Shown piece after piece: positions 32,381-60,421 of a DNA stretch of 64,000 nt. The notes under the pieces were generated by a model. The model searched no databases. It saw only the letters and a program-made list of their open reading frames with translations, and was not told where the DNA came from. Numbering within the stretch: the stretch's first letter is position 1; each line of letters begins with the position of its first letter. The DNA is from Hyphochytrium catenoides (taxonomy: Eukaryota > Protista > Hyphochytriomycota). The translations under genes were made by a program, and so were the position numbers. The stretch is from assembly GCA_900088475.1 (NCBI GenBank), contig FLMG01003792.1:14501-78500 (forward strand), written 5' to 3'.

Positions 32381-32864
32381 CACTGTTTGCTGCACTTTGG
32401 ATGCTTCTCCTTTCATGCTTCAGGTTGGCTCTCCACTGGCTTCTTGAACAGCACTTTCTGGCTCTATCTACCCTCTAAGGACATCCTTGACACCCCACAG
32501 CCCACACCAAGCAAGGTGATTGCCATCATGCAAGCGATAAAGTCAAAGAACGGTAGGAGATGCCACCCAGTGAGGTGCCATCATCGTCCAAGGATGTGCT
32601 TTGTGGGGTTGAGAGGAAGGGTGCAAAGAGGCCGAACTGAAGGATGGAGTGACGCCTGAACAGCAAAAGAGCATCCAGCTTGATGATGCGACCTCCTCAC
32701 TACATCTTTTTCCAGTGACATAGCAGGGACGCGTGGCGCATCAAACCTACAGCTGCCCGCGTATTCTTCCTCCTCCAACTAAGGCTATAGCCTCGCGCTA
32801 CTGAAGCAAACAACCCATACCGCGCAAATCTGAAGCCTTGCTACCATCTCTTCAATCCAGCACA

Positions 32865-33944
32865 ATGAAGGGCAACACCTCTGCTATAACCTTTCTGCTC
32901 GTCGCCGCATTGGCGCTGTTCGCAGCTACGGTCACTGGAAGGCCAACAGGAGCTCCAGCGTGCCACTTTAACCTTCAGGCAGTCACAAAGGGCCATGGTC
33001 CCCCCACAGACCTTCCTGAGGTAAAAATCTCACTCTCCGCGCAATTTTATGTTCCGGGCAAAGCGCTGAAGATCTCTGTCACCGGTCCCACCGGGTGGAA
33101 AGGGCTCTTGATGTATGCTAGCGCTCAGGGAGGAGCCCCAGCTGCTGGGGCGCCAACTGCTGGGGCACCAGGTGCCGGCGCTAACCCACCCACCACGGGC
33201 CCTGCCATCCCTGGCGGTAGTGCACCCACCACAGGCGCTGCCGCCCCTGGCGCCGCCGGTCTACGCCACCTCCAGCTCGATCCAGGAGCGCCAGGGACCC
33301 CACCTCCTACAGCCGGTGGAGCACCAAGTGCACCTGCAACTGGCGGCGTTGCGACGCCTGGAGGCACCAAGAATCATGTGGGCAAGTTTATCAACCTTCC
33401 TGGCGGCTTCAAGCCACAGACTCAGCAGGCGTGTACCACTGGACAGGTCACTAACGAAGGCCTAGACGCTCTCAGCGGAGCTTCCACCATTACGCACTCC
33501 GACCCAACAGCCAAACAGGACACTACATCGTTCATCTGGCTGGCTCCTACAAAGTCTGTTGGTCCTATCACATTTTCTGCTGTGGTTAACATGGGTGCTG
33601 GGCCTGTTAGCAAGTGGATGCTGGTTGACGTCGTGGTCAAGCCTGGCAAACTAGTGAGTGGACCATCTACTGGAAGTTCTGCAGGTGGAAATGGTACGAT
33701 TGCGGTCACCCCTCCAACTCCTACTGCAGCCACTGATTCGTCATCATCGAGCACACCTACCACTGGTGACAGCAATCTCCCCCCAACTGACGACTCTGCT
33801 CCAACGGACGGAACTTCGGGTGATGCCACTGGCGGAGATGCCACTGCAACGGCTGATGGTCTTGCAGCATCAGGTGCCGACTCCAACAGGGGCAGCTGGC
33901 TCTTGCCAGTGTTCGTTGCAATGCTTGGCGTTAGCTTGAGCAAA
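32865..33944 (+). CDS. secreted Reeler-domain protein with a Gly/Pro/Ala/Thr insertion, Ser/Thr/Asp stalk and probable GPI signal; 3' end runs into the N gap
   Basis: ATG 32865 (MKGNTSAITFLLVAALALFAATVTG). Reeler motifs RPTGAPAC..GHG, YVPG, WKGLLMYA, VGKF, TITHS, FIWLAP..GPITFSAVV. C-terminal SGA..WLLPVFVAMLGVSL. Gap at 33945-34004. Confidence 0.85.
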
Positions 33945-34529
33945 NNNNNNNNNNNNNNNNNNNNNNNNNNNNNNNNNNNNNNNNNNNNNNNNNNNNNNNN
34001 NNNNCGGCGAAGATCGCTGAAAGTGGCATCGAGCTCTGCTGCTCATTCCAAAGATTAAATAAATCTCAACAATATGAATCCCATCATCTCAGTACACCGA
34101 CTCTTCTTTGGTTTATCCGCTTCCTTTGCACTTATTGCCCCAACTTTGGGCTATCACCCTCGATGTCATCTTCCGCTCTTCGTATTTAAGCAGAGTTGTC
34201 CTCCTAGTTGACATGTCCTCGTTTATCATGTCTGTTAATTCTAAAGCGGCAAGGTGGGGCAGAGCTGTGTTAAAGGTGACTAGCTTGTACTTGAATTTGA
34301 TTCTTGACTGCTGCTGATCAGAAGATCCTCACCCACGGTCGCTACTGCTAATGCCACTTAGCAACGAAAAGATGAGTGCAGAAGATCGAATCAATGAAAA
34401 GTGCGATTGAGTTAGGGAACTTTGTTTTCCCTACAGATACATATGTTCTCTCATCATCAACTGCACTGCTCTGTCGTTTTGAAGAGAAGCTTGACACTTA
34501 GCAACAGATCACCCTTCACGACCTCTAAC

Positions 34530-37500
34530 TTACTGACGGAGTCTCGCAGAGGTGTCTCCGCCGGAGAGAAGGCGTGCCATCTGATCACGATAACTTATGT
34601 CTGCATCCCCGTTCATATAGCTTAAACCCGCAGCCTGTAGGGTCTGGCAGTAGTCGGGCTTCTCGATGACGTTGAGATCTACTAGGCTCCGGCATATGGA
34701 ACTAATCCACATTGCCTTGATCGGCGTTGGCCTGAGAAGTCTCACTTCCACCTTGATCACTGACCTTGACCTCCCATTGTCCGCTAGGTTTGGCAAGCAC
34801 AACCCTTCAACCTTATTCAACAGAACGACCACGTGCTCCTCATTGAAACCAAATATCTGAGTGAGATGCAGGAGCACAGCATCATGCAGGAAGTGGAGCT
34901 GATCCCGGCTGGTCCACCATGAGTCGGAGTTATGAGCAAAAGCGAAGGCAAACTTCGTCGCGATGAATCTGGCGGGAACACTTCTTGTCTGCATCAGGCG
35001 TTTCTGGCGGATTGTATCTCCTGGTATGCACCGCGTTGCTAGCTTACTCATGGGCTGGGACCTGTATAAATAGTCATCCGGCGATTAAAGACACTTAGAA
35101 GATAACGAAACCGACATTGGAAAGACCGAGAAAATTATGACTATGGACAGACAGAAACCTTACCGGGTATAAATGAGTCGAACCACGCTGACCACTGAGC
35201 CGGAAGCTTGGTTTCCAGAGGTTTGTTGACCAGAGTCAATTCCTGGCTGCTGCGACGTCTTCCACTTGATAGGAAGAAGTTCAGACAGTCCCGGCTTGGG
35301 GCTTGAAGTGCTGCTGCTATTCATAGTACCAAGAAGGGGTGCTCTACTAGAGATAGTAGAGGGTCGTGGCTCCCACAGGAAACTAGATAAAGAATCTTCA
35401 CTATCCATCGATAGTGACTCGAGCACAAAGTCTTCCGCTACCTTGGAAGGGGCTGGCGGTAGAGGACTATGAAGAAGGTGGACAAGAAGAGTGACAGAAC
35501 TTCCACGTGTCAGATTCAGAGGCTCCGGCGTCTGGAATACCAACTCTTGGTCTCTCATAGGCAACAGACAGGAGAGGGTGAAGTTGACCCTTGCAAGGCC
35601 TTCAACGTAGATAGTTCCTGTAGCCTTGACGCAAGCGCCTCCCTCCGGTCCCCATGCAGCTGGAATGCTGACTCCTTTGAGGGTAAGGTCACGCTGAGCA
35701 CGTAACGAATAAGCGACACGACGATAGCTCCAGCTTTGAGTCAAAGAAAACGGCGTGCGGTGGTTAAATAGAGACATGGCTGACCATAAGCCATCTACAC
35801 TTTGATGTTCCCTGTTCACAAAGCAGAGACAACGTGAGCCAGTAACACAAGGATTCCATGTCGGAGGCAATTACGCTCACCTTTCAATCATCAGACTAAG
35901 TGCAGGATAGCTGCTGACTGGCTGACCAGAATCGGGGCCAAGATTCGCGGGCAAGGAGTCAAATCTTCCTTGGACGTTTAAGAAACGGGCTCCAGAAATA
36001 ATCATCTCAGGTTGCCCTTGGGTAAGGCTGGTCGTTGCGCAAAGGACATTAGAAGTTGCTGTGATGAGCGAGTACCGTCGACCAGGAACTAGGTCCCTGG
36101 ATACTCCAGGGAAGCCACAAAGTCTTCCATCTACTTTTCTAGATGGGGACAGCTGTGAGACCCTGGCCATGGTTAGAAGTATTCCGTCCTCAAAAAGGCC
36201 AACGTTGGGCTCTACTGCGTAAGGAGGGACCCAGGGAATTGCCGAGAGTCTCGTTGGTGAAAGGTATTCTTGCTGGATGCAGATACCACTAAGCTTTGCA
36301 GGTACGAAGAGATTAAAGTCTAAGGTCACATAGCCCTCGTTGCTTGAGACAGCGCAGGATGTTCCAGCAGGCAATGGGTTTGGTAGGCCCGAGTATGCTG
36401 TTCGAGGTGCTTCACTCAACATAGGGGCCTCTGGCCTCCTACGATTTAGCAGTTAAGGTGGCCATAAGTATGATGTCTTGATCAAGTAACATGAAGTGGT
36501 AAAGAGACAGCACAAAGGGCAAAACTAACCTTGTAAGGATGGGTGTCAGTGGACTTCCAGACTCTAGGTTGAGAGATGTGCCTAAAATGTCATCCTTGAA
36601 GCTTTGGGGACCAGAGAAGGTCCCAAAGGCATTGATAAAGGTGGAGTTAACTGAAGCCACTGATGCGGTAAAGCACCTATTGGATAGAACAATATAGATT
36701 GGACCTGCTTGAAGTAAGATGGGCTCCGCGAAGTATTCGGCTGCACCCTCAAGAACCTGGCTTCTATTTGAAAGCGTTAGGCTTCCTAATGTTGGGAAGA
36801 AAGTCTTATTAAAAAATCGGAGCAGGGCCAGACTGGTTGATGTCCAGTCTTCTCCAATGCGGTAAGGAGGGGCTCCAATACCCAGACCTGTCACTAATGC
36901 TTCTTGCTTGACTGTAAATGCAGTAGCGGTCCAAGCTGCGCTGCATGTAGAAGTGTTAGTTGGCGAAGGTAGCCACGAAGAGAGGAAGCCAAAGGCCCGA
37001 GGTGTGGGCTGTGGTGGCTCTAATGCGACAATATCAAATAATGGTGCAGTGATGGGGCCGCAGGATTGAGTGGCCGAATAACCGCTGACCCCTGGTGTGT
37101 TAGAGAATGTGGACGTGTTGACGGCATCGCCTGTCTGGTTACTCTCAAAAATTCTCTGGCAGGAGAACGAAGCCCACCGCAATTTCATCTGAGAGGCGGT
37201 AGGACCTGTCGCCGTCTCCCGATTCTCTACGAGTTCGAGGTACCGCATGGGCAAGACTGCAGTTAAGGAGTAGTGACTTCCGCCATTTAGTTGTGCAGAT
37301 CCACTTAGGCCGCTAAAGCGATAAGAATTTACGCGCTGGGAATCGGATGAGACATTGCTCTGGGCTAGGACTTTGCCTGTCATGGTCTCGTAGAGTCGAA
37401 GGGCTACTGATGCATCTCCCAAGCCTTCGCACAACAGGGGGCTTGCAACATCGAGAATTCCTAACCCTGTTACCGTAATGTTTGCGACTGGGACGAAGTC

Positions 37501-40500
37501 CATGCGAATCTCAGTGCTCTCTCGCACACACCGCGCCGCCGCGACCTTTGTTGGAGGTACGATATTGCCAATGATGGACTGCATCGCACTGTCACCACCA
37601 TACGGAGCAGCAATGAATGGCGTTAGTAAGATGGCTGGAGAATCATCCAGACCTCTTCGACTTACCTCTTGGGCACGAAAGAGAATACCATGGATGGCGT
37701 GCCACCGTCATTTACGCGCTTTGTTGGATCAAGCAGCTCAGCTGTGAGGTTGAAATGTGCTCGTTCTTCTGGTGTCTGTGGCAGGTTTACATAGCTATAG
37801 GAGTTCATGGTGTAGGGAGCTGAAGGACTTGCGCTAATGCCAAACGGAAGAGAGATATTAGGTAAAATAGCCCGCAAGTGGTATTGAAGTCCTCGAGTCA
37901 ACAGCTTCCTTTCGATAGGCTCCAAGAAGACCGATCTTGCGCTGTCAGCCGTAGCTGAGTATCTGCTTACGTCCGATCGAGCCAACAGCTTCGAACCCTG
38001 GAGCAGCTCCACCCTGATGCTAGAAAGATTCGTACCTGTGGGCATCATCATAATACAGAAGGCTAAGCAACGAGGTATGGTCACCTTATTCCTTGGAGTC
38101 TACTAGTATCAAAACCTACCACTTGTATTGAAAAAATACGTGGGCACACCGAGGCCGGTTAAGGTTATGTCAGAAGTCGGGGTGAATTGCATCGCTCTCG
38201 CCACAAAAACCATAGAAGCGTTCGACATCGGCAAGCCCCATCCTTGTGTGTGAGTGGTCTCTAGGAGATACTGCACGGAAAGATTGCCAAGGGGACGCTC
38301 CCTTGGGTATCTAAGATTGAAAAAGCAAAACGAGATGAGTATGGGCCCACGACTCATCGCCATCACGTTTCTTTCTCCATACCGGGTATAGATCGCCGAC
38401 ACAGGCGAGCAAGCTTGATAAGGCAATGCATTGTCCCACGATTGAGTCCAGAAGTCCCGTGGAAGACTGGTTGCCATTGAAGAAACGGCCATTCCGTACT
38501 CACGCTCATTGTTTGGTTCGATGGCTAATGGATGGAATTCTCCTAACACCGGGTCATACCTGTCTGAGCCCGCACAACTCAGTAGCACGGGCTCGTGCAT
38601 AAGAGCAGCCATGAAGTACATTTGTCCACGTCTCAGTAGAAGAGGCGACTCAAAGGAGGTTACCAGTCGGTTTCGAGTGACGTCTGACCAGTCCCCTAGG
38701 TAGACCGAAGCCAGCCGGGATCCGCTGATATAGGGTGCTGAGACCGAATAGGCCTCATAGATTCCAACGTGGTACGTCGGAGTTTGTGCCTCCATAGTAA
38801 ACGGTAGAGCCACGGCTGCACCAGTGAGTAGAACATCCTGTAGCGGCGTGAACTGGTACCCTACAATCAGGCTCCTCTCTTCATGTAACTTAGGACCACT
38901 GAATGGTACTATTGATGCAGGAGCAAGATACCCTTTAGGTTGATAATCGGGGCCGATGGCCTTGGATTTCCTGATGGTGATAGATGCGGAATGAAGTAGG
39001 AATCAGACATAAGTTATGGCGAGAAAAAATAAAAGTCGAGCTTATTATCTCTCAATAAGGTACGTACCGTGCAAACAAGAAGGTCAGTGGGACTTTGGGT
39101 GACTCAAGCACACTGCCAAGAGTAGTGGTGTTGTTATCTACACTTGAAGTCAACATTGTCACCATAGTATGTGTATAGTGTGTCACGGTGAGCTCGAAGG
39201 GCAGCACACCAGAAAGAGTGTAACGCAACCCAGGTTTAAGAGAGATTGACTGCCCCAAAGCACCATAGGCCATGTAGGAATTGGCTCCTTCATAGTCGAA
39301 TGAGAGTGAATCTGACATAGAAGGCGGAGGCTCTATCGACAACGAGAAGGAGGTCAGTAACTTCCCGGATCCTTGCTCGCTCAACTGGAGGGCGACGTTC
39401 GTCATGGCGGATTGAGTTAAGTTAGACCAACACCCTCCCGAGGGACTTGGAAGCACCGACCCAAAACTGGTGACCATTAGCTCTTGCTGCACAGTGAAGG
39501 TGAACGAATAGCTGGTCTGACGCTGATTACATAGGTGCACACTGGCAAATTTGAGGGCCGCCTCGCCAACCGGACCAGGTGCATGTCTGATAGGAGCGGA
39601 AAGGGAATCACTTCACGAGGAGACTCGATCCTGCACCGTGACATCTTAGCTTACCTTCGGAATTTTATAGTTAGGACTGGCACCTCTACTTCATCCCGCA
39701 AACCCGGACCGGGGCAGAAGCCACTCCTAGCTGTCCTATTACCAGCATACTGCAGGACGAGTTGTGGATCTAAACTAGCGGGAAGAGAGCTTGTGCCCTG
39801 ATAATATGCTATCGTGAATGCCGTGGTTTGACCACGGAATTGGGGTGACCTCTCGACATGGCGAGGCCCAGAACGGAGATATTTTCCCGGAACAGTAGCG
39901 GCCAGATAGTACGTCGTACCAGCGTGAAGAGTAAAGGTTCCTGGAAGATGGTAGTACGCATAGTCGTCGCCTTCGTGAAGAAAGGCAGCGAGTACGGACA
40001 GTCTGAAGCGGGTAGACCCTCGAAGTACCAAATTCTCATCGTAGATCCCCAGCTCCAGCCTTCCCATGTCTACGCTCGGGCTCCCCAGTTGGTGGAAGGC
40101 GTCCTCAAGAGCTTCACGCAGCAGGCCTACAGCTAACATGGATGTTGATATCTCTGGTTTGACCTGAAGCAGGGCAAGAGTATGGACTGTCTGGAGATCC
40201 TTTCGCACGACGGGGAAGAAGCCCTTTTGATCAAGGAAAAGAGGTGTTCCGACCCCCGAATAGAAAGAGTTGGACCTAGGAGAAAAGCCAGAGAAACGTA
40301 AGGGTTATTGTAAGGGTCGGCAGCGCAACTCGTCATGCCTGCTTCTAACCTGGTATACATGAAGCCAGCGCCATTCCAGAGGCCAGATATGGCCCAGGGT
40401 GCATTTCTCACAGCCGAGGTACAATTGAAGGATGTCCGCATGTCACATACAACGTCAAAGCGTATGGACTCCTCGGAGAACATTGACCATACTTGCGTTT

Positions 40501-43500
40501 GTGACATCTGTATAGTCAAAGACAGAGATGTCCGCAGAGCATACCTGCGCCCTCGGCGCAGTCGCACCGGTGGCCTCACTGACATATACCTAAAACCTCT
40601 AATCAGTTTTCCTCTTCTTGAACTAAATAACCCCTCAGCGACCACTTGATTTTGGTCATCCACCATCACTACAGCTTGAGTATCTCTAGTGTGGTTGGTA
40701 CATCCTAGGCAATTCTCCTGATTTAGATCTACCAGGCCCAGCGACGTTATAAGGATGTCTTCGTAAGGGTAAAAGTCAGTCGACATCAGCGGTCCAGCTA
40801 AGCTGTCCACCCTAATTACACTTGTATTCTGCATTGCTACTGCTTCAGTATCAAAGTCTTCATCTCTGTCGGAGGAAGACCTGACCAAGGAAAGAGCCAG
40901 TCAGAAGAATTAACGCCAAGCAACACAATTGAGCACTAGGTATCGTTTCAGACTTACCCGCCTCCGAAGGAGAGTTGTGGCACATAAGGCAGCAAGCACT
41001 GCGCGTTCCAGGTCAAAGAGGAGGTGACTGAACAAGAGGGGACAGAACATGTCCTCGACTCTCGGCGGAAGGCACTAATATTCATGCCGCGCACTCCCTC
41101 AGCTCTAACCGCGGCGTCCACCAGTTCCCAGTGTAGAGGTTTTGGGAGACCGCCTAGTTCTAGACCGCTACACCCTTCAAGGACTGAGGGGTAGCAACCA
41201 GATAGACCAAGTCGGTAATCGATCACCTTCACGTAATTGTTGCAGCCACTTGCCACATTCTGTGTAGCCAAGGTCATTGGAAGCTCAGCGGTCAGAGTAT
41301 ACGTGTATCCGGATTCCAAAAACAAGCTCCTGTTCAGGCTGAGATAATGACTGTAGGGGAACAGTGTGACGTTGACTAAGAGAGAGGGCGGTGATCCGCT
41401 CTTATAGATTGAGATTGGAATGGCAGCGGAAATGAAGTCCTGCTGCAACTTCATCGTCCTGTCTGGAGTAGGGAGAGTGTAGGAGTTGATGAACCCTTCC
41501 CGCTTAAAGTACAATCCCTGCACCTCTATTGTTCCCTTTGGTACGATAAAATCATAGCCCACTTTGCTGGTATCTACGGAAAGCAGAACCACAGACGCTG
41601 ACGCTGGAGGTGGAGCTGTTGGAGGTGGAGCCGTTGGAGGTGGGGCCCCACTGGGTGGTGGAGAAGGTTTTGACTGGGTATCATTACTGGGTGCCTCGCT
41701 GCCATAATGATTTCATAGAGGTTTTGGGCTTTATTAGCTCCTTGGCATGGGGAAATTAAAAGAAAAGCCTTTCACAAACCTGGTAGGAAGATACGTGAAT
41801 GTCATCAAAGCAGCAGGGTCCAAGGTCCAGGTCGAGTTCTCCCTTGTGTACCACATCGCGGTGCTGGAGTAAGGGTCATTCGCATACAGCCAGTGGCTAA
41901 TCCGGTGGCCGATCGTGATGTTCGGGTTGACCAGGAAAGACGCAGCCTGACGACTAGAGACATTGAAGACTGGGAGATTAGCAATTAGGAGGTATGAAGT
42001 ATTTGCCAGCAGTTGCGGCGCGGGGGGATAGTAAGCCGGTCCGCTAAAGCCACTAGTCCCGGGATAAGTGTTGAACGAGTTGTAGGCGTTTGTCTCAGCC
42101 CTTCGAAATCTGCCTCCAGCCGCCTCTACTATCGGATCAACTACCTCAACCACAGCGCGCGCAACTTCATAACCATATAAAGCATTATAGATGGCAATAG
42201 TCACGGGCCCATCCCAGCCTGAGGTTAATCCGGACGAACAATTATTCCATTGTGGCTCAACCACACCCAGCCCAGTGAGGGTCATATTCAAGCTTGGCCT
42301 GAACTCGTATCCCAACAAGACTCTACCCGGCTCTAGAGGTGCTCCGCTGATGGGTTTATTTCCTATGCTGGAGCTGGAAGGGCAAGAGTCCAGTAGCAAT
42401 TGGCCCATACGTCCAGCTGGAGTTCCCGATGGTTCTCCTGAGGGCCTGCAGAAGGGCAAGGGGACTTTACTTTGAACTACAGATCTTTGATGTATCGTAT
42501 TGAAAGATGACAGGTTTACCTCACGATAACCATGCTAACCGCAGAGAGATTTTCTCTAGCTAGCAATAGTTCGGCATCCCCTTTTATTGGCCACCAAGAG
42601 GGAATTTCAGCACTGTCAAGGCTTGAAGTCGTGTTAACTCTCGGCAGGGAGAAGAGAGTAGCATTGCCGACCCCCACAAGACTTGCTAAGGTTGACGTAT
42701 TTATCTCTCCTGCCGGTCCCAAGACCCCTCCATTGGAGATGTTTGCGAAAGTTGTTTGCCTGCGTCTCACAAAGGGAAGCAGAGCTAGAACGCCATAACG
42801 GCCTCCCGCTGGGAGAACCATCCCTGAGGGGAGGCCTCCCACATGCTGCATTTCCATGATCGCTGACCATCCACCTACCACGATGGATGCGAGAAGAGTC
42901 ATGTTGCCACTATCCGTAAGGTTATAGACTCCAATTTTCCCATAGAGCTCACGAGCATTTGCTAAATAGGTTCCATTTCCAACGCAAATGTCACCTGAAG
43001 CTCTGTATAGTCCGAAACCCTTAAGGAAAACAGTGCTTTCGGTTGAAAAAGTGAAGCCAGAATAGACACCGGAGTGGACCTTGATGTGGCAGATATCAGG
43101 ATTCCATCCAGTAGGGTTAGAAAGTGGGAATACGCTGCCGCTGCTCACCATTTTCGTGGTCGGTACCCTACAATAAGCCACAAGATTTGCGAAGTTAGTA
43201 GGACTTACAGCGGATGCAGACGAGGACGGAAAGGGCGCTAAGCTAAGCTCGGTACCTGTAGTAGAGGAAGTCTAGGAGACCCTTTATAGATTCATTTCTG
43301 CAAAATGATGCGAGACACGGCTGAAGGTTGAGGTTATACAATGTGTAGGGTAGACCATAATTGGCAGGTCCAGAGGACCCTAAGTCCTCGTAGCTATTTC
43401 GTGATGGGAAAGAGAAGAAAGACGACTCAATCTGTATAACGTCATCAGGACTCATCGTTGATGGAGGTTGCCCATTGCCATTTGATCTTGATGTGTTCAC

Positions 43501-49500: not shown

Positions 49501-52500
49501 CTCGAAAGGCCCTATCTCGTTGGCCTCGTCCACAAGGCTGTATTTGAAGTAATCCTCCCATACTCCCAGTGCTGTGAGGAGTGTGGCGTGCTTAGGACGG
49601 AAAGAAAAGCCGGTAATGAGACCTCCCTTCCACGTCCCATTGATCGCTAGTGATTGATTTCGTAAGTCCTCGTCCATACTAACGGCGCTGTGGCCGCTTA
49701 CAGACGGGCGCAATCTGTCAAAAGAAGAGAGTTAGAACGAGCCAAAGATCAGGTAAGCTGCAAGACAACAGACCACCCACGATGCTCACCTGGCTGTCCA
49801 GATCGCTGGCAGATGTGGGTATAGGACACGGCTCCCTACACCTAAACCGCCATCCCATTGAGGGATGATACTTCCATTGCCAGAGTTCAGCGAAGAGTTG
49901 ACACCCGCAGATGAACTATTCAGACTTTCGCCTCCAAGTACTTCCGACCAGACGAAAGTCGCATCGGCCACATTTCCATATAGCGGAAGCCTGTGGGTGT
50001 GTTGGAATTGAACTACAGAGCTTCCATTAGCTAGGTGTTCGATGGTGGATTCCGGCGCGAGGCGATACGCTGAAACTGCGATATTGGGCTCAAGAAAGTC
50101 CCAGGGTTTTGCGGTGGTGAGCAACAGAGCAGGCACAGCCACTAATACAGAGTATGTCCTGCCAGGTAGTAGGACTACCGGAGTATCAAACAGTACGCGG
50201 TCACTGTACGGCAACAATGTATCAGTTGTCAAGAGGACGGATGAGCCACTGGTCGTGTCGTAAATCCAGAGGGGAATTTCAGCGGAGGCCAACAGAGCCT
50301 GCACTTGAGGCATAGTGGGTACTGGACCATCGGCAACGACAACATCCACCGCTTGACGCTTGAAGTCAAAGCCTGAGATTGACCAGGGCCTATCGTCCAT
50401 GATACTGAAATCGAATCCAGCCACCATCGGGGGTGATGGCAAGTAGAAGGGCCCGTATTGAGGAGTCGACGCATTACCGTCCGGTAGGGGAGGTGGCACT
50501 GTAGGAGTTGGCCTGCAGGGAGCACAGTTAACAACAAGGAAATAAAGAACCATTGTCCCTGGAATAGAGCAAGCTTTAAGAAGAGGAAGGAAGACCTACC
50601 CACTAGGTTGTAGCTTCTGATACGTGAAGGCGACAAGACCGAGACTGTCCACTGGAGGAAGGCTATTCGAATAGTAGTCGCCTGTAACTAGCCAAATACT
50701 ATCTGGACTCGCATAGTATGGTCCACCTTGTTTACGCTCCCCGAAGCTGATATCCTGTTGTTGAACGCTGTATGTGGTCCTCATTGGAGTTGTCGTGGGT
50801 GGAACTGGCAAGTTGACTACCAAGGTGTAACTCTCCTGACCGCTCAGGCGAAGTCCACGAATCTGGGTGGGCAGGCTACCGTCATAGGACAGTTGTACGA
50901 CAGGGAGGTAATCAAGCACTGTAACCCGCATGCCAAGAGCGGGGAAGAAGGGATTGCTTGGTTCCACTCGAGCACGGAGTACTTCCACGCCTGTATGATC
51001 GTTATAGATAGCGACCGTGATAGCATGTCCCCAACCATATCTCTGGGTATCGATGTGCTGCGAGCTGAAGTTTAAAAGAGACGAACAATTCCACAATGGC
51101 TCAGCAATGCCAATGCTTGTGACGACGATATCGGTCAATGGTTTGAAGTTGTAGCCCAGCAGCAAACGGTCTGTTGCGGTCTCGGTCCTGGGGCAACCAT
51201 CAACGACGAGCTCATGAATCTGGACAGAGCGGTCTCCTGAAGGTGGGATTGGGCGTCTAGGAAAAAAAATAAAGACGGGCAGCAATTCAGCAAAACGAAG
51301 GTTGGACAAGCTTCACAACGCCCATGCCCTACCTGTTAAACATTGCAAAGGCGGATGGCAATAGGGATTCGATAGGGTACGATGCTGCAAGAGTCTCATT
51401 GGCGCTGTACGCCCATAATCTCTGGGACTCGAGCTCTGTAGGAAGTAACCCTCCACTTGCCATAACTTTATTCGTGTCATGGGCGTCGTAAAAGGAGGTA
51501 GAATAGCCCACTCCATTCCACCATGGACTTTTCCCTGGGCTCTGGACCCAAGGTAGCGCATAGTCACCCACCACACGTACAAAAGGCAGTGAACCAGCGA
51601 TGGCATACAGCTTCCCAGCTTGTAGATGCACCTTAGTTGAGAGTACTTCCAATTGTTGTTGCATGCCGATTGTCGGTGACCATGGCCCAATAGTCAGCGA
51701 GCCCAAGAGCGATAATTTGCTAGAGTTAGGGGAGGATGCATTCAGGCCGTAAACGCCAACCTGAGATGAACCCATGCCCATGTTTAGGTGGAACGTCCCA
51801 TTCAGTCGACAGAGGGGCTCATCATGCGATGGCATGATGACTCCAAGAGTTGAGATCTCAACGTCCTCAATAGGGACAAATGTGAAGCCTGACAGGAAGC
51901 CATATGGTACCGGAAGTGCGCAGATGCCTCCAGCACCTGTGTGGGGCGGGAAGATTGCGGTATCGCCAACGGGGAAAGGTTGGAACGGATGCTCAACCCT
52001 ATGACAGAATGTCGTTACTTCTTGCTGTTATTATGTTCTTCAGGCTCACCAAGAGACAACATTTTAGAGCACGAAGACAGAGTAAAGAAAACGCTAGGGT
52101 TCGGTCATACCTTGTCAGAGCCAAGTCCAGAAGTCCATCCATCCCCTCTGCAGAAGCCACACATGAGGAAGAAGCAACATCGCAACCTTCTCCCAGCCCG
52201 ATGGCCGCAAGGTTGTTGAAGAGGCGGAAAGGCGGAATATTGTTCCCTGTAGAATAGGGCACAGGTTTTGGTAGATACCTTCTCTTAACCTCCACAAAGT
52301 TGGCTGGACCAACACCAAGGCTCGTCGCATTGCCAAATGCTTGAAAATGAACAGGAAGGAGTCCAACGACGGTGTATGTACTGTCTGCTCTTAGTAACTG
52401 AGCCGAGGAGTTGTGGAAACTGCCATATAAGGTGCTGCCTCGCTTGGTACTTCCAGGTCCGATGATGGTCGATAGAATAAGCTCCCCCTGCCAGTCATAA

Positions 52501-55500
52501 ACTCCAATAACGCTAGACCATCTGGTTCTGTCCCGAAGTTCTTCCATAGTATCAGGGTCTGAGGTACAGTTCGTCCCATTGTTATTGTTCAAGAGATCGC
52601 TGTTCCATGACTTTGGAAGTGCGAAACCAACAGCGGACAGGTAAACATCCGAAAGAGGGACAAAGCTGAAGGCCACTACTGCTTCCTGAGGGATTGCACA
52701 AGCCTCAGTGAGCTCTAATCCATACAACGGCTGGCCCACCAGAAGTCCATCTCCGTAGGGCACCCTAAGGGATGGGATTATTTAGTACACTATTAATAGA
52801 ACTGTTTTTACTAGAATAACCGTTTGCAACGACTTACTCTGTGTATAGCAGATCAACCATGGGTAGTGAGGCGGAATATGAGTATTGCCCCATCGTACCG
52901 AAGCTCCCGCCGTCTGCTACAGAAAACAACGGTGCGATGCTGGGTAGAGGATCACCTGGACTGGAGCCCCCCATGGGCGGGCCCTGTAACCACGAGTAAA
53001 TATCCAGCAGCTCTGTGGTCTGACGTTGAGGCAATGAGAAAGTCCCGCCAATTCTGTAAGACACCCGGGCCACAATTCCGTAACGCCTCCCAGGGTAGAT
53101 AAGAATCGGTTCTTGCTCTAATGGGCTATACAGAACTGATGGAGAAGTATGGTCTACCCTCACTGAAGCTGTGGATCGATGGAATACGGTGGTTGAACCA
53201 AGCAAAACCGATCCCGCAGTAAGGTCATAGATCCCCACAGGGACTGCGGTCTCTAGTGGTGTCAAGCCCCACTCGAAGAAATAAGGACTTAGAACCCCAA
53301 GAGCTGTCACTTTAGTCACGACCTTGGGAAGGACCTGAAGTCCTACGAGGGAGCTGCCAGCAGGGTCAAGATAGCTTAGGCCTCCAGAATACACCCCATA
53401 GCGCACCGGAGAATTGCCTTCAACGGTTCCTGGCGCGGGCCTTGAAAAAATAGAATATTGTCAACGAGAGCATTCGAGTTAGCAGACTAATGTAAAGGCG
53501 ACTGGAACCGGCGGCAATCACGCACCTGGTAAAGAGGAAGGACACTGTCGGTGACGGAAGTTCGTTAGCTTGAATGTGGCTGTTATAAACGGTGTCCTGC
53601 GTACTGTTAATGCCGTAGCCGTCGGCAAACTCAATGAAATCTCTCAAAGCAAAATGTGAGGAGAGCCTGGCCGAGAAAGCACCATCTGCCACTCTACGAG
53701 GCATTCCGGGAAGTATTCTCATGACGATGCTGAACTCAATATCTGGCTCCAGCTCCAATGCGGGAAATAGAGCAGCGTAGTGGTAGCCATCTCTGACCTC
53801 GTTGACCAGACTTACCGATGTCGAGGTCAAGAGAATTTGGGACTGGTAATCGATGAGGTTCACCTGTACCTGAGCAGGAGTAGCTCCGACCATGCATAGA
53901 GGGCAGTCTAGCTGAGAAGTTAGTAGCTCACTCCAGACCCCAAGGGCAGTTATCAGAGCTCTTCGCCTGGTGATGAACCTGAAGCCGACTTGTTGGCTTT
54001 CGGTCCAGGTGCCATTGAGCCAGGATAGTGTAGAAGCGGCTTCTTCAGGTGCAAGCACTCCTGGCTTCCCGGCAACGGATGGCCTTAAACTGTTTCAAGT
54101 AGTGGTCAACAACAAACGATAAAACGTCCATACGCATGGAAGGAAACAGAAAACTTACGCGCTGACTTGCAAAGTGGGCATATGAAATAGAGTAAAACCT
54201 TCCTCTAATGCAGCACTCTTAGTGATGGCTGGTGACAACTGCTCCCCATTCTGCGATGCGCCGCTATCGGAGCCAGTTGGCATAGTTCCATTAGCAGCAT
54301 CTGACAGGAGGGGCCACCATGGTGGAGCTATATTAGGATATCCATAGTGCTCCGCCAGCGGAAACCACTCTGCTGTGATGTTAGACCATCCACCTGTCAA
54401 AGGATCAAACGTGGCATTACTCCGAGCGCCTAAACCTAAGCGGTAGGCGGAAACGTCCACCCCATGGCCGCCGGGATACTGACTGATTTTGCGATTGGTC
54501 AATAGAATCATGGGTAGTGAGGCTAGAAGCGTGTATGTCTTGCCAGCAGCTAATACTACCGCCCTTTCGAACCGGAGGCCATCTTGATGATCGGGTAGGA
54601 TCTGATGGGCAAGAAGCTGGTTGGAGGCAGTGTCATACAGCCAGATGTTAAGACTAGCATTGCGTAAAACGTCTCGGGAGCTGATCCCTCCCCCTCCTCC
54701 TACACTACTATTGCTGCTGTTGACGTCCCACTCCATTATGCTGCGATTGAAATGCAGACCCCAACAGGATAAGGGGATTGTTCCGGTCACGGTGAAGTCA
54801 TATCCGACTAAGTTGGGCGCTGATGTAAGGTAATAGGGGCCGGTCCACGCATTTTGTGGCGGAGGTGTTGGAACTGGAGCTTCCGTGGGGGGATAAGTGC
54901 TGTGATACGTGAGGAGAATTTAGCCATAATTAGTATTGTTGTTGTTCAAATTCCGTCGATGATGAGAGACTTTGAAGGGCCACTTTCTTTGCTGGAGTTA
55001 GATGGACCAATGGGGCTGACAGGAGAAGAGACCTACCTATAACCTTCCAGCAACGGCACGATAAGACTATATGCCGTCCCGTACAGTGCGCTGTTACCTA
55101 AAACTGTCGTGCCCATGTTCAAAGCAGGCTCTGAATGGTTCCAATAGGCCGGCAAGTCTCCTTCGTCAAGGTGAAGGACATTTCGAGCGTCGTTGGCCCC
55201 AAACCTGTACGCTGTGACCACAATATTATCCTTGAACGGGACACTAACGTCTACCTCAGTTAGCACTGTGAAGGGAAGGGAAACAAGGATTGTATATAAC
55301 ACTCCACCCTGCAGAGTAAAGCTGACCGCATTGCGGGTTGAATATGGTGGTACCGAGCCATAGTAAACAGGATGAAAGTAGCCTGATGCCCTTGAGTAGA
55401 CTGCAATGTATGGATATTGCCCGGCAGTCATTATCTTCTCGGTCAAAGTGGTGGTCTGTCCAGTTGTCAAGTCTCGCAGCAAGGCACCTTGGTTATAGAG

Positions 55501-58500
55501 AAGCCCATCCACCTTGAAGTCACTCGTGCTTGTGACATAAAAATCGTATCCGAGCAGCGATGGTTGCGAGAGCTCGAAGTATGCACCTGGCACACCGGGA
55601 CCTGACGGGAATAGCCTGATAAAGGGGAGAATGTTCAGATAGGGCTGGACAACCAGGAAAAAGCAACAAGAGCCTTACCGGTCAAATGCTACTGCCACTG
55701 AGCTTAGCAGCTGGTGAGAGTTATCCGGAATAGGTTGGCTTTCGGTGCTTTGCAGATTTGATGCCAGTCTTTCGCTATTTATTTCGAGTGGAAGAGCCAT
55801 TGGCAATTCAAGAGCTTCCAACATGGTACGGTAAACGTTGAAAGACCGAGCATATCCGACTCCGTTCCACCAGATATCCTCTGAGAAGCCTTCGATGACC
55901 CTAGCGAAAGGTAAATTTCCAATTACGGCGTAGTCACCACCGGCCCGTAGGTGAACTTTCGATGCCAGTCCTTCTAACTGCTGCCCACCATAGAGAGGAG
56001 ACCAGCTGCCAACTGTGACGGTGGCTATTAGGGTAAAGACTCTTGCTGGTGAGGTTGCGTTCGAGGTGACATTGTAAAGGCCAACTTGCGAAATAGTGTT
56101 CGCCATGTTAGGGTAGTATACCCAGTTGAACCTACAAATATCCTCCTTGAAGGATGGTACGGTGATCCCCAGTGCTGACACCTCGATATCCTCAGTAGGG
56201 GAGAACCAAAATCCAGAATAGACACCAAATTCTGCCTTCAAAGAGCAGGATGGTAGTGCCGCCGGCAAAGGCGGCGGCAACAGCAGCTGCAAAGCGGGCG
56301 ACAAAGGGCTGGAAATAGGCGGTGAGATCCTAGGATGGTGCCACGGATGGTTAATAAAGGTGAAGAGGAACAAGAAAGGAATCAGTATTGACACCAGATA
56401 CTTAGAAGAGAGCTCGATCATCGTTAAGCGACAAACCGTTTGGGATAATCGTCTGTTATAGAATGGTGACAAAGTTGCCTTACCTGACATATAAGACATC
56501 TAATAATTCCTCAATAGCAAAGTCTGGTTCGCAGTCTGAAAAAGGCCCTATCGCGCAGCCATCACCAAGCGGCAAAGCTGAGAGTGATTGAGGAAGCGAC
56601 GAATAACCCCTTGTTTGTGCCTCTGCCTCCGAGTCGAAGGTAATGTATCGCCTGGTCATATGCACCAGAGGGCTGGTGTCTGAGCTTGAGTTACTCGCGT
56701 TTCTAGTGTTGTTGAGGAAGAATGGCAGGGAGCCAACAAGAGTGTACAGTTTTCCTGGTCGTAGGACTAGACCTGAAGAATTGTGCATGGCGCTGTAGAC
56801 CACATCCTGCTTTGTCTGATTGTTGATAGCAGAAGAAGAACTAAATCCTCTGGGGCTTGCGGGCCCGACTTGTGTCCAATCTATCAGCTGGCCTAGGTCG
56901 TCGTAAAGTCCTACTGTGGCAGCCCATCGGGCGCTGAACCGCATGGACTCGACATCATCTTCCTCCAACGAGCATGAGCTATCATTGCCTTCCGCAGGAG
57001 AGTGGCTACTTGCCATCCAATCGGGAAGTACAAAGCCAACAGCGGAGATGTACATATCAACTTGCGCCACAAAGCTGAAAGCCGCTAGCGTTCCTTTGGC
57101 AAGCCCACATGATTGGGCAGACGAGTTCCGGCTCCCGAATAACGGTTGGCCAAAGATAGCGTTGGCCTCGTCTGGCCTGGGGTAAGCATGGAGTTAGTCA
57201 GGTGTTAGAGCAAGCTCACAAACCCGCGCACCTAGTGTAAAGGAAGTCGACCATGGGCAAGGACTCTGAATAGGTGTACTCAAATCCGGCTCCTGTCGTG
57301 TCGAAGTTCTGACCGACCGGATACAGACTGGCAAATGGAGGAAGGGTATCTCCATTGCTTTGCGTCCCTGGGAGGCTTATACTTCCTTTGAGACGAGAGA
57401 AGACAACAATTGGACCCTTCTGATGAATCGCGGTGGTCCCAGGTATGCTGTACGACATAAAAGCCACAATGCCATAGTACCGCCCAGGAAACAGAGTTAT
57501 GGGTCCATTCTCTAGGGCATCATAGACAACCCCTGGCGAGGTGACACCTGAACTAAAGGAGGCTGCCGAAGGATGAAAGACCTTGGCAGACGCAAGCAAG
57601 ATGCCACCAGCGCTAAGGTCATAGATGCCAACGGGAATGGCAGACTCAGGAGGCGACAGTTCGCTGCCCCACAGGTTCCACGGGCTGAGAAAACCCACAG
57701 CTGATATCATGGTCTGAATTCTTGGGGTGATCTGCCAGCCCATGAGGGAGCTTCCTTCTGGATTGATGGACAGCGTGTTGCCGCCAAAGGAAGGAGTGTA
57801 AAGCAGGGGTGACTCTCCTTGTAGCCCACCGGTGGGTCGTCTATCACAAAGTATTCCGACCAGTGGCAAATACATATGAGATATGAATAACATCAGGTGG
57901 ATTGCGGTTAGCACTTGCTACAAGTGGCTTTTCTTAAGTAGTACCTTACCGTGTGTAGAGGAAGGAAACTGCAGGATAGACTTCGTTCCCTTCGAAATTA
58001 GGGTCGACCTTGGGCTCAGTTTCCCATAGGGCTGAGAGGTTATGACTGAGTGATGACCCCTCAAGGCATTGGCCCATGATGAACTGCCTGCCAAGAAGGT
58101 CGGAGGTAGTGGTGGAGCTATTCAGCATAAACCTTGGCATTCCAGCAGCGCTGGTCAACACAATGCCGTACTCCGTACTGGCCTTGAGCTCCACGGGAGG
58201 GAAAACGGCAGCGTAGTAATAGCTAGCTATGATGTCATCCCCAAAACTCACGTCGGCAGCTGCAAGGATAAGGTTTGACTCGCGACTTATCAGCTCTACT
58301 CTGACGCCTGGAGGACCGACAGTGTCGTTGCCTTCAGTGGGCGCGAAGGGTGGTAGCTGATCCCAAGACAAGAGCTGATTCCAGACTCCCAAAGCAGTCA
58401 ACAATGCCCCTCTCTTTGTCCAGAAACTGAACCCAACACGAGTGCCAGTGGTCCATGTTCCGTTGACAAATGGGGGAGAGACTGCACTGGTAGGGTTGTC

Positions 58501-60421
58501 GTCTCCTAGCGATGCCACCAAGCCGGGGGTACCAGCTACCTTTGGCCTCGGCCTTGCAGAATTTGTTTAACCGAGTAGCAGGAGTCCGTGGGTAAGGATT
58601 GCACACGAGGACCATGTCAGCGATTCGAATGGTTGTCTTACCTTGCCATTAGAAGGTTCGGAACGTGAAACAGCGTCATTCCCTCAGCCAATGCAGCCTC
58701 CTTGTTTAGAACAGAAGCCATCTCACCTGCTCCGGTATAGCTGCTATCAGTCTCGTGTTGATGGTCGACATTGTCCGGCAAGTAGGCCCACCAAGGTGGC
58801 GTCTCTCCAGGGTAGCTCTGGGTGGTGGCAATGGGAAAAGAGTAGACAGGCCAAAATGACCACTGCTCCCCGGTGGCAGGACCGTACGACGCATTACTGA
58901 CGGACGGTTGCAGACCGAAGCGGTATGCAATAATGTCCAGGTTATTACTTCCTGTGCCGTATTCAACTACTTGGCGATCTGTTAGGAGAATCATTGGAAG
59001 GGACGCCACAACGGAGTATGCCTTTCCGGCTCCAAGGTTCACGGGCTTGGTAAATCTAACTCTTTCTTGAAAGGCCTCTAACACCTGATGGGCTAGGACC
59101 TGGCCCGTGCCTGTGTCATATACCCAAACGTTCAAAATGGTGTTACGCAAAGTGTCCCTTATAGATTGTATATTTGTCTGGATGTCGCCTTCCATCGGTG
59201 ACCATTCGGCAATACTTCGGTTGAAGTAGAGACCCCAGCACCTCATGGGGATGGACCCAGTAACAGTGAAGTCATAGCCAACGAGATTAGCCTCAGGACT
59301 CAGGTAGAAGGGTCCTCTCCATGACGCAGGACTTTCTGTCACTGGCAACCCACTTATCCTGCGGCACAAGGAGAAGGCAGGAACAAGGAGGTAATCAGCT
59401 CAAGTATGAAGTAGGTGCTGCAATGCAATCTGGTGATCTTCCGAGTGAGTCTCACCTTAAACTCTGGAATGCCGGGATGAGAAGTCCAGCCTCCGATCCA
59501 CAATTGCAGCTAGTCACGATGGCATTGGAAGCAATCACTGACGGAGGATCAACATCATTCCAATACCCAGGAAGAAAGCTCTCTTCAACATTACTGAAAT
59601 CGTCCAGAAACCTTGGGTCGTTTTCTCCGAGCCTGTAAGCTGAGATGCCGATGTCGCTCGCCGATATGTTAGGCTCCAGATTGGGCTTTGTAAGAATTGT
59701 GAAAGGCAGTCTCAACAGCAAGGTGTAGTTGTTATAAGGATACAAGCTAACAGCATCAAGAGAAGAGAGCTCTTGGTAGGGCGAGAAGACACGTCTTGCA
59801 ATCTCCTGGAGGTTGGGCGCACGCACGTAAAGTGCGAATTCAATGTACTGCCCCATGGACTCAAGCTTGGCACCCAAAGACCTCACTTCGCCATTGGTCA
59901 CATCTTTCACAGCCACTCCTTGGTTGTAGATCAATCCCTGTAATTGAACTTCACTAGCAGTGTCTTGCACATAGAAGTCCAAACCAACGATTGAGGGATT
60001 GTAGTCAACGATGAAGGCGTCCGCGACGCTGCACAAAAGGATGCAAACAGGTGTATGAGCGCGGCAAGCGACGACATATCATATGTGAAAGGAGAGAGAA
60101 AGAACGAACCTGTCGGCGGGTGAAGGTGGCTCAGTGGTGGACTGTGAGAGCACGACCTGGGATAACAATTAAATTAGCTCTCAGTAATAGAAAGTTAGCC
60201 AACAAAAGGAAACTAACCGTTCCATGCTCAATGCTGAGAAGGTGGGCAAAGCACAGTGCCCAAAGCCAGGTAGTGGCTCGAAGTTTGGTCCTATAGAGAG
60301 TGGTGGCAACAAGATAAGTAACGACCACAGCAACATAGTTGGTCTCCCTTCTTGTACAATAACAGAAGTTGCTGTTGAAAGACTTTGGGTATTAATCTCA
60401 CCTTCTGCTCAATGGCTCCAT
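34530..60421 (-). CDS. giant secreted multi-domain protein (about 7,500 aa, about 39 exons, about 35 tandem DUF4082-like beta domains)
   Basis: Hand-spliced GT-AG model. Exons (high-low): 60421-60402, 60290-60218, 60156-60110, 60028-59456, 59358-58642, 58552-57950, 57840-57232, 57176-56484, 56329-55679, 55615-55037, 54899-54159, 54089-53526, 53440-52838, 52764-52111, 51998-51333, 51256-50600, 50512-49790, 49714-49184, 49101-48505, 48403-47693, 47608-46976, 46895-46215, 46150-45356, 45284-44745, 44652-44056, 43939-43256, 43167-42520, 42445-41780, 41698-40958, 40880-40350, 40275-39655, 39586-39068, 38970-38383, 38310-38120, 38035-37666, 37588-36530, 36438-35881, 35811-35164, 35061-34530 (or a further short exon ending at TAG 34431). 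The frame is preserved at every junction. N-terminus MEPLSRRTKLRATTWLWALCFAHLLSIEHGTVVLSQ. Repeated core G(F/Y)xF..vtalG..v(G/w)iYD...g.lLa...L.pG..Y.v. Confidence 0.88.
42520..46895 (-). repeat. super-repeat unit 4 of the giant gene (G,B,C,D,E,F)
   Basis: G (GIAEPLWTC..GWG), B (AGYDFTV..FNRT), C (LLTALG), D (PLESAVPVGIYD), E (ARWSSILGIYD), F (DICHI..YSGFTFST). Confidence 0.85.
46976..51256 (-). repeat. super-repeat unit 3 of the giant gene (G,B,C,D,E,F)
   Basis: The first exon is type G (C..R.LLGY.F..GIAEPLWNC..GWG); the other five match B-F. Confidence 0.85.
51333..55615 (-). repeat. super-repeat unit 2 of the giant gene (A,B,C,D,E,F)
   Basis: The same six domain types in the same order as unit 1. 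Confidence 0.85.
55679..60028 (-). repeat. super-repeat unit 1 of the giant gene (domain-exons A,B,C,D,E,F)
   Basis: Type motifs: A GL(I/L)YNQG; B GPFYL..GYDFTV..GL.FNR; C NGTW..GF.F..ALLTALGVW; D ESA(I/V)PVGIYDL..VFH; E FSFV..RW...G.YD; F SGF.F..CR.N..VGLYN..G.WS. Confidence 0.85.

What the first reader, a model, noticed from the sequence alone, without database searches (positions are those of the whole stretch)
35164..60028. One domain per exon, with symmetric phase-2 exons: a ready-made exon shuffling/skipping cassette array
Seen: from exon 4 onward every domain-boundary intron falls after the second base of a codon, usually splitting an Arg (…YTR|, …FSR|, …FDR|). Nearly all domain exons have lengths divisible by 3 (e.g. 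573, 717, 603, 609, 693, 651). Any exon or block could therefore be skipped, duplicated or deleted without a frameshift. Inference: the array grew by intronic recombination and could yield combinatorial isoforms or strain-variable repeat numbers, by analogy with Dscam and the exon-shuffling LRR-ROCO/NB-ARC-TPR genes of brown algae. That would suggest a diversifying recognition or surface-variation system.
Basis: partly seen in the sequence, partly recalled or inferred. Interest (0 to 1): 0.88.

Follow-up and report, generated by a model that had tools for sequence, protein, structure and literature searches.

The report
Giant repeat gene, uniform phase-2 introns
A soil protist carries a 26-kb gene for a giant secreted protein of about 35 similar beta-sandwich domains, nearly one per exon with every domain-boundary intron in the same phase; this regularity looks like an old footprint of exon duplication, not a working system for making variable proteins.

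Summary
Observation confirmed. On the minus strand, 60336-34530, an in-silico model of 37 exons gives one intact 7,530-codon frame. Of 36 introns (55-189 nt), 35 are phase 2, 26 of them splitting an Arg codon.

Each domain exon encodes a complete beta-sandwich related to bacterial DUF4082 and to PHR domains. The exons form a six-exon super-repeat, (ABCDEF)2(GBCDEF)2GBC, followed by a decayed tail.

Interpretation only partly supported. Growth by duplication with breakpoints in introns fits. A live cassette or diversifying system does not fit the tests available:
- Paralogous exons are only 24-51% identical in protein, with no DNA-level repeats.
- Exon order is strictly collinear.
- Introns are too short to hold relic exons, and no copies lie elsewhere or on the other strand.
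- Exon lengths are unequal.
- Two DNA samples are collinear over 6 kb, with no indels or joints.
- Polymorphism gives pN/pS 0.32.

No RNA run was listed, so exon skipping is untested. Arg-splitting follows from AG|G splice consensus in phase 2.

Verdict: a relic of clonal exon and block duplication in a probably constitutive giant extracellular glycoprotein. This is a new member of a known kind. The scan has noted this same stretch before in overlapping windows.

The parts
60218..60336 (-). Candidate first coding exon: ATG at 60336, MLLWSLLILLPPLSIG signal-like start, donor CG|GTTAGT in phase 2. Inferred; further upstream exons are not excluded.
55679..60028 (-). Block 1, six single-domain exons: A1 60028-59456, B1 59358-58642, C1 58552-57950, D1 57840-57232, E1 57176-56484, F1 56329-55679. 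All lengths are multiples of 3 and all flanking introns are phase 2.
51333..55615 (-). Block 2: A2 55615-55037, B2 54899-54159, C2 54089-53526, D2 53440-52838, E2 52764-52111, F2 51998-51333. This is the closest sister of block 1 (34-51% aa identity, type by type).
46976..51256 (-). Block 3: G3 51256-50600, B3 50512-49790, C3 49714-49184, D3 49101-48505, E3 48403-47693, F3 47608-46976.
42520..46895 (-). Block 4: G4 46895-46215, B4 46150-45356, C4 45284-44745, D4 44652-44056, E4 43939-43256, F4 43167-42520.
40350..42445 (-). Start of block 5: G5 42445-41780, B5 41698-40958, C5 40880-40350.
35164..40275 (-). Divergent tail of eight more domains: 40275-39655, 39586-39068, 38970-38383, 38310-38120 plus 38035-37666 (one domain split by a phase-1 intron), 37588-36530 (two domains, no intron between them), 36438-35881, 35811-35164. 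Type assignment is only tentative (D?, E/F, F, G/C?, B, ?, D, ?).
34530..35061 (-). Putative last exon: a 176-aa non-repeat tail with no known family, then a stop. Alternative: the gene ends at the TAA directly after 35164 and this is a separate small ORF.

Best explanation
This is one very large gene for a secreted, heavily N-glycosylated protein of about 7,530 residues. It is a string of about 35 divergent DUF4082/PHR-like beta-sandwich domains, probably an extracellular fibre, coat or adhesive/lectin-like component of a soil protist. The uniform 2-2 exon symmetry is a historical footprint. An ancestral unit of domain exon plus phase-2 intron was duplicated in tandem into a set of distinct domain types. 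A six-exon block was then duplicated several times: (ABCDEF)x2, (GBCDEF)x2, then GBC and a decayed continuation. Only symmetric exons can be duplicated without breaking the frame, so the symmetry is a precondition of the array's existence rather than a device. The split Arg follows from the AG|G splice consensus read in phase 2. The duplications are ancient and the array is now a fixed, most likely constitutively spliced structure under purifying selection. Shown: gene structure in silico, intron phases, block structure, the age of the copies, fold and family of the domain, and purifying selection. Inferred: secretion, constitutive splicing, and an extracellular structural or binding role.
For: Gene structure: an intact 22,593-nt reading frame across 37 exons, with 35 of 36 introns in phase 2. 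Intron position is homologous in all copies, after the last strand (...LYT|R).
Block structure: blastp and global identities give an ordered six-exon super-repeat with blocks 1 and 2 as sisters.
Age of the copies: paralog identity is 24-51% aa (18-25% for the diverged C5 copy). There are no direct DNA repeats above 73% over 64 nt, no tandem repeats and no alignable introns.
No relics: no extra or reverse-strand copies in the 64-kb window. Introns are 55-189 nt and cannot hold relic exons.
Selection: SNPs are 15 synonymous, 15 nonsynonymous and 10 intronic, giving pN/pS 0.32.
Structural variation: contigs of two DNA samples are collinear over 6 kb with no gaps or joints.
Domain: one exon folds as a complete all-beta domain (pLDDT 82, pTM 0.83). 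It matches DUF4082 clusters at TM 0.60-0.66 and PHR domains at Z 11. hhalign to bona fide DUF4082 segments gives 98%, E 1.5e-13.
Secretion: N-glycosylation sequons number 116 against 52 +/- 6 in shuffles. There is no transmembrane stretch and the start is signal-like.
Outside relative: a fragment, P0014, keeps the same exon end.
Literature: extreme phase-2 bias is read as clonal exon expansion in Tetrahymena LRR genes (PMC6564038). Phase-2 AG|G introns split AGG Arg, and only symmetric modules duplicate in frame (PMC8001218).
Against: No transcript evidence of any kind was available, so constitutive splicing is assumed. The exon borders, the start and the last exon are predictions. The two DNA samples belong to one study and species label and may be the same strain, and only 6 kb of 26 kb was laid. 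A gene-wide pN/pS of 0.32 is fairly relaxed and does not exclude positively selected sites in loops. The function of DUF4082 domains is unknown.
Confidence: 0.75

Rival explanations
1. One reading: the symmetric exons are used as cassettes. Regulated skipping of single exons or blocks gives a combinatorial set of isoforms of a recognition or surface-variation protein.
For: Arithmetic allows it: 33 of 37 exons are multiples of 3 with phase 2 on both sides, so any skip keeps the frame. The protein is probably extracellular. Some donors depart from consensus (GTGCGC, GTACCG, GTTTGT, GTATCT), which could make some exons skippable.
Against: No RNA data. The domain types are distinct and kept in a fixed order, so skipping would not exchange like for like as in Dscam. 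No conserved intronic pairing elements were found. Selection is purifying overall. The copies are ancient. Frame-preserving symmetry is expected from duplication alone (PMC8001218, PMC6564038).
Confidence: 0.1
2. The array is copy-number variable between strains through unequal crossing-over between repeats, as in apolipoprotein(a) kringle repeats or the Ectocarpus ROCO LRR exons.
For: The tandem block structure, with a period of about 4.3-4.4 kb, must have arisen by unequal recombination at some time.
Against: Homologous recombination needs DNA identity. Here the best direct repeat is 64 nt at 73% identity. The introns share nothing. No indel or joint was seen in two samples over 54000-59999. 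There are no relic exons and exon lengths are unequal (26 different lengths among 32 single-domain exons).
Confidence: 0.05
3. The six-domain super-repeat is functional in itself: a periodic scaffold or ruler that matches a repeating partner, as in the titin and nebulin super-repeats. The exon symmetry is still only a relic.
For: Type-specific conservation across blocks is stronger than between types within a block. D copies are 41-49% identical to each other, against 12-27% identity to other types. The order has been kept through at least four block copies.
Against: Conservation of order also follows from simple block duplication without later rearrangement. No partner or periodic structure is known, and the tail blocks have decayed.
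Confidence: 0.1

Closest known systems
Tetrahymena LRR genes with arrays of 90-bp exons separated by phase-2 introns (PMC6564038)
   Same: Tandem exons, each a repeat unit. More than 96% of the introns are phase 2. A junction codon is shared between neighbouring exons. The authors read this as clonal origin and successive expansion of one exon-intron unit.
   Different: There the exons have exactly equal length (90 bp) and encode part of a solenoid. There are thousands of genes, many with recent copies still alike in DNA. Here there is one gene, the exons are 519-795 nt and each encodes a whole ~200-aa globular domain, all copies are old, and there is a six-exon higher-order repeat.
Ectocarpus ROCO-LRR and NB-ARC-TPR genes with dynamic exon shuffling (PMC3341825)
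   Same: One repeat per exon, with lengths divisible by 3, so that gain or loss of an exon keeps the frame. The organism is a non-metazoan eukaryote.
   Different: Ectocarpus has 72-nt exons of identical length, inactivated and reverse-strand exon copies inside introns, nearly identical paralogous genes with recombined repeat regions, and attached signalling domains. None of these is present here.
Titin, twitchin and nebulin type modular giants, and Patthy's symmetric-module rule (PMC8001218)
   Same: A giant protein of tandem beta-sandwich domains, about one domain per exon, symmetric intron phases, and super-repeats of several domain types. Symmetric exons are well suited to in-frame skipping.
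   Different: The metazoan modules are class 1-1 Ig/Fn3 domains and some are known to be differentially spliced. Here the modules are class 2-2, the domain is DUF4082/PHR-like, the organism is a soil protist, and the protein is probably secreted.
Drosophila Dscam1 alternative exon clusters (from established knowledge; no paper read here)
   Same: Many similar exons in tandem within one gene for an extracellular protein.
   Different: Dscam clusters hold alternative versions of the same half-domain, only one of which is chosen, guided by docking and selector RNA pairing. Here successive exons are different whole domains in a fixed series, and no pairing elements were found.
Bacterial DUF4082 (PF13313) surface and secreted proteins, and PHR domains of MYCBP2/BTBD2
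   Same: The same fold: TM 0.60-0.66 to DUF4082 clusters and Z 11 to PHR crystal structures. The profiles are homologous, and multi-copy arrangements occur in bacteria (P0001 has 7 stretches).
   Different: The exon domains do not reach Pfam's threshold. They are about 50 residues longer than the 143-position model, have introns between them, and are about 35 in number in a eukaryotic gene.

Membership tests
Clonal exon-duplication array with uniform intron phase | Introns between repeat units are all of one phase | tested here: met
   35 of 36 introns are phase 2. The single exception lies inside a domain.
Clonal exon-duplication array with uniform intron phase | Introns sit at the homologous position of homologous repeat units | tested here: met
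   An alignment of 32 exon peptides shows a shared core and a shared C-terminal strand directly before the donor.
Dynamic exon-shuffling receptor genes (Ectocarpus ROCO/NB-ARC-TPR type) | Repeat exons of identical length | tested here: not met
   Lengths range from 519 to 795 nt, with 26 different lengths among 32 single-domain exons.
Dynamic exon-shuffling receptor genes (Ectocarpus ROCO/NB-ARC-TPR type) | Inactivated or reverse-strand exon copies in introns or nearby | tested here: not met
   Introns are 55-189 nt. tblastn of all exon peptides against the window found 0 HSPs outside the gene and 0 on the plus strand.
Dynamic exon-shuffling receptor genes (Ectocarpus ROCO/NB-ARC-TPR type) | Recent copies, alike at the DNA level | tested here: not met
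   The best direct repeat is 64 nt at 73% identity. There is no tandem repeat with the exon period. Amino-acid identity is 24-51%.
Dynamic exon-shuffling receptor genes (Ectocarpus ROCO/NB-ARC-TPR type) | Signs of diversifying selection | tested here: inconclusive
   pN/pS is 0.32 from 30 exonic SNPs over 5.2 kb. Site-wise tests are impossible without orthologues.
Dscam-type mutually exclusive exon clusters | Neighbouring exons are alternative versions of the same protein segment | tested here: not met
   Neighbours are different domain types in the series A/G-B-C-D-E-F.
Dscam-type mutually exclusive exon clusters | Docking and selector complementary intron elements | tested here: not met
   Only short, imperfect inverted repeats (76-94% complementary, 16-32 nt) scattered with no recurring docking-type arm; I did not map them to exons or introns or compare them with chance.
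Dscam-type mutually exclusive exon clusters | Many isoforms seen in RNA | not testable with these tools
   No RNA run was listed.
DUF4082 (PF13313) | Reaches Pfam's gathering score | tested here: not met
   0 of 8 and then 1 of 32 exons matched, at E 0.13.
DUF4082 (PF13313) | Profile-level homology to bona fide members | tested here: met
   The exon profile finds bacterial proteins, 7 of the 10 scanned passing PF13313. hhalign gives 98%, E 1.5e-13. Caveat: those members were picked from hits of the same profile.
DUF4082 (PF13313) | Same fold | tested here: met
   TM 0.60-0.66 over about 150 residues to DUF4082 clusters. AFDB DUF4082 entries match at E 1e-5 to 4e-4.
PHR domain (PF08005) | Fold similarity to solved PHR domains | tested here: met
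   3gbw Z 11.2, 3no8 Z 11.1, 3hwj Z 10.8. Sequence similarity is not significant (E 1.1), so this shows a shared fold, not membership.

The most novel reading that the evidence does not exclude
A non-metazoan soil protist has built a class 2-2 mobile module from a DUF4082/PHR-like domain that is otherwise mainly bacterial. It multiplied the module into a 35-domain secreted giant with a six-domain super-repeat. It still uses the symmetry, skipping whole exons or six-exon blocks to set the length or binding repertoire of an extracellular fibre. That would be a protist counterpart of titin-like differential splicing, and a counter-example to the view that exon-shuffled extracellular modular proteins are a metazoan speciality.
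Probability: 0.1. Interest if true: 0.65.

Novelty: new member of a known kind. Interest (0 to 1): 0.33.

Why it matters
The gene is a clean, large example of intragenic growth by exon and block duplication outside animals. It uses class 2-2 modules, whereas metazoan modular proteins use class 1-1 almost exclusively (PMC8001218). It also places about 35 copies of a poorly known, mostly bacterial domain (DUF4082) in a eukaryotic secreted giant that has almost no relatives among 15 billion public proteins. That is useful for annotating this unannotated genome and for discussion of how modular extracellular proteins arise in protists. It does not open a new mechanism at present. The symmetry is what duplication leaves behind, and nothing yet shows that the cell exploits it.

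Tried and rejected
- RNA evidence: none was listed for 50000-59999. The second search (kind any) gave only DNA runs, so splicing could not be checked.
- Comparative loci: the search for homologous proteins with exons D1 and B2 and with the C-terminal ORF found nothing. Two scans of metagenome contigs with D-type and B-type alignments found nothing; one attempt failed because no conserved stretch was available.
- Only close relative: P0014 sits on a 1,186-bp contig whose DNA could not be fetched. P0043 is not on record.
- Direct Pfam naming of the exons failed.
- A profile search of PDB sequences gave only E 0.18 and E 1.1.
- Assigning the eight tail domains to types A-G with type HMMs was inconclusive apart from C5, so the idea of a full 6 x 6 design is not claimed.
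- dN/dS between paralogous exons was not computed, because at 24-51% aa identity synonymous sites are saturated. Polymorphism was used instead.
- A pseudogene or non-gene reading was rejected, because 22.6 kb stays open across 37 exons and SNP density is threefold lower at nonsynonymous sites.
- The organism's name is coded in the tools and was not pursued.
Full report
WHAT IS THERE

The stretch is one gene on the minus strand. ORF listing shows about 35 successive open segments of some 200 codons between 60078 and 35163. Most segments end in Arg followed at once by a stop. The DNA shows why: the exon ends in AG (or CG) and the intron starts GTAAG, GTGAG or GTAGG, so reading through gives AGG-TAA, AGG-TGA or AGG-TAG.

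I enumerated frame-keeping GT..AG pairs, checked the doubtful places by eye and joined the exons in a script. The result:
- 37 exons and 36 introns of 55-189 nt.
- One uninterrupted frame of 22,593 nt, or 7,530 residues.
- 35 introns in phase 2.
- One phase-1 intron (38119-38036), which lies inside a domain.
- One domain boundary (inside exon 37588-36530) with no intron.
- 33 exons with lengths that are multiples of three.

The junction codon is Arg at 26 of the 35 phase-2 introns.

All borders are predictions, because no RNA run was listed. The model has independent support from polymorphism. Contigs of three DNA runs laid on 54000-59999 differ from the window at 40 listed places. These fall at 1.3% of intron bases, 1.2% of synonymous sites and only 0.38% of nonsynonymous sites.

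IS IT MORE THAN CHANCE?

If introns were independent, 35 of 36 in phase 2 would be vanishingly unlikely (about 2e-20). A rough intron scan of the rest of the window shows no such bias (phases 6/5/8). But the introns are not independent. In an alignment of 32 exon peptides, every copy has the same core (G.F ... lTalGv ... V.iYd...g.LL ... L..G..Y.i...LP) and the same last strand (v.fLYT) directly before the donor. The introns are therefore homologous: one ancestral exon-intron unit, copied.

HISTORY OF THE ARRAY

All-against-all blastp and global identities sort the exons into seven types, in the order ABCDEF ABCDEF GBCDEF GBCDEF GBC. Eight more diverged domains follow, and only some of them can be tentatively typed.

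Blocks 1 and 2 are each other's nearest relatives for every type: B 51%, D 49%, F 41%, C 39%, A 35%, E 34%. So whole six-exon blocks of about 4.3-4.4 kb were duplicated.

The copies are old:
- Protein identity is 24-51% (down to 18% for the diverged C5 copy).
- The best direct DNA repeat in 25.6 kb is 64 nt at 73% identity.
- Tandem Repeats Finder sees nothing at the exon or block period.
- The introns share no sequence.

THE DOMAIN AND THE PROTEIN

One exon (D1, 202 residues) modelled with the 32-copy alignment folds as a complete all-beta domain (pLDDT 82, pTM 0.83). 'One domain per exon' is therefore literally true.

The nearest shapes are:
- Bacterial DUF4082 clusters, TM 0.60-0.66, and AFDB entries at E 1e-5 to 4e-4.
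- Among solved structures, the PHR domains of MYCBP2 and BTBD2 at Z about 11.
- After those, a cyanophage capsid protein, the lectin-like domain of Cwp84, phage fibre and baseplate proteins, and the CBM of an acetyl-xylan carbohydrate esterase.

Pfam does not name the exons directly. However, a profile of the exons searched against 1.84 billion representatives finds 552 proteins. The best are bacterial multi-DUF4082 proteins, and 7 of the 10 I scanned pass PF13313. hhalign between the exon profile and those DUF4082 segments gives 98%, E 1.5e-13. The domain is a divergent relative of DUF4082, not a member by Pfam's own cut-off.

The best library hit scores only 145 bits, so no orthologue of the giant is in that library. 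One 246-residue fragment (P0014, from a 1.2-kb contig of another sample) is 41-45% identical to the B-type exons. It loses similarity exactly at ...LTR, the same exon end.

The protein starts with a signal-like MLLWSLLILLPPLSIG and has no transmembrane stretch. It carries 116 N-glycosylation sequons against 52 +/- 6 in shuffles. I read it as a secreted giant glycoprotein: an extracellular fibre, coat or multivalent binding protein. That function is inference.

Pieces 98% identical turn up in a rhizosphere metagenome. An earlier follow-up in this scan calls the genome an unannotated soil eukaryote.

TESTING THE CASSETTE IDEA

Ectocarpus ROCO genes, the model of dynamic exon shuffling, show exons of identical length, inactivated and reverse-strand exon copies inside introns, and nearly identical paralogues with recombined repeat regions (PMC3341825). 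Here:
- Exon lengths differ (519-795 nt, 26 values among 32 exons).
- Introns are far too short to hold relics.
- tblastn finds no copy outside the gene or on the other strand.
- No two copies are alike in DNA.

Dscam-type choice needs neighbouring exons that are versions of the same segment, and pairing elements in introns. Here neighbours are different domain types in a fixed series, and only short, imperfect inverted repeats with no recurring arm were found.

Strain-variable copy number needs DNA homology between repeats, which is absent. Contigs from two samples run collinear with the window across exons B1 to B2 with no gaps and no joints. The samples may be the same strain, and only 6 of 26 kb could be laid.

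Diversifying selection is not indicated: pN/pS is 0.32. That is relaxed but purifying, and a gene-wide figure cannot exclude a few selected sites.

WHAT THE LITERATURE SAYS ABOUT THIS PATTERN

Only symmetric modules can be duplicated or inserted without breaking the frame, and a phase-2 intron in an AG|G site splits an AGG Arg codon (PMC8001218). Tetrahymena LRR genes show the same extreme phase-2 bias, which their authors read as clonal origin and successive expansion (PMC6564038). Both the symmetry and the Arg are thus expected by-products of how the array arose.

What is somewhat unusual is the class (2-2, against the metazoan 1-1), the size of the module (a whole 200-residue domain), the six-exon super-repeat, and the domain family in a eukaryote.

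VERDICT

The inference of growth by intron-level duplication is supported. The inference of a live cassette, shuffling or diversifying system is not supported by any test I could run and is contradicted by several, with the caveat that splicing itself is untested.

Most likely (about 0.75) this is a fixed, constitutively spliced giant extracellular protein whose exon symmetry is a relic. The same stretch was noted several times by first readers of overlapping windows. Those notes agree with what I measured and are not independent support.

Noticed in passing
window 32838-34058 (+): Neighbouring ORF with a weak Reeler-domain match (PF02014, E 2e-4, 22.3 bits against a cut-off of 21) and long Pro/Thr/Gly/Ala-rich mucin-like stretches. 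It is interrupted by an assembly gap of 60 N at 33945-34004.
   Followed up: partly
protein P0014 (Logan contig of 1,186 bp, run ERR12035942): The only close outside relative found. It is 41-45% identical to the B-type exons, and similarity ends exactly at ...LTR, so the phase-2 exon end seems conserved in another organism or sample. Its DNA could not be fetched.
   Followed up: partly
window 56066-56324 and 58026-58176: A rhizosphere metagenome run (X4) holds 259- and 151-nt contigs about 98% identical to this gene, so the organism or a very close relative lives in soil around roots.
   Followed up: no
window 54000-59999: Contigs of the species' own DNA runs differ from the window at about 50 sites in 6 kb, and different runs carry different alleles. 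This fits a heterozygous diploid or mixed haplotypes at roughly 0.8%.
   Followed up: partly
window 38036-38119 and 36530-37588 (-): Two departures from the one-domain-one-exon rule: a phase-1 intron inside a domain (probably a later gain) and two domains fused in one 1,059-nt exon (probably a precise intron loss).
   Followed up: partly
window 61424-61630 (-): ORF starting MSSGVIFYPASCLSLLAMALASGAS..., hydrophobic and ending at a GTGAGT donor. It is either an upstream exon of the giant gene or the start of another gene; it has no Pfam match.
   Followed up: no
window 34533-35060 (-): The 176-residue C-terminal piece has no family, no homologue in the 5.8-billion-cluster collection and only weak Atlas neighbours. 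Whether it belongs to the giant gene depends on one predicted intron.
   Followed up: partly
exon B2, window 54161-54898 (-): The nearest ESM Atlas cluster by features is an unnamed eukaryotic cluster, mostly diatom fragments (score 0.92, 172 shared features). This is a lead that stramenopile transcriptomes may hold relatives. It is not an alignment.
   Followed up: no
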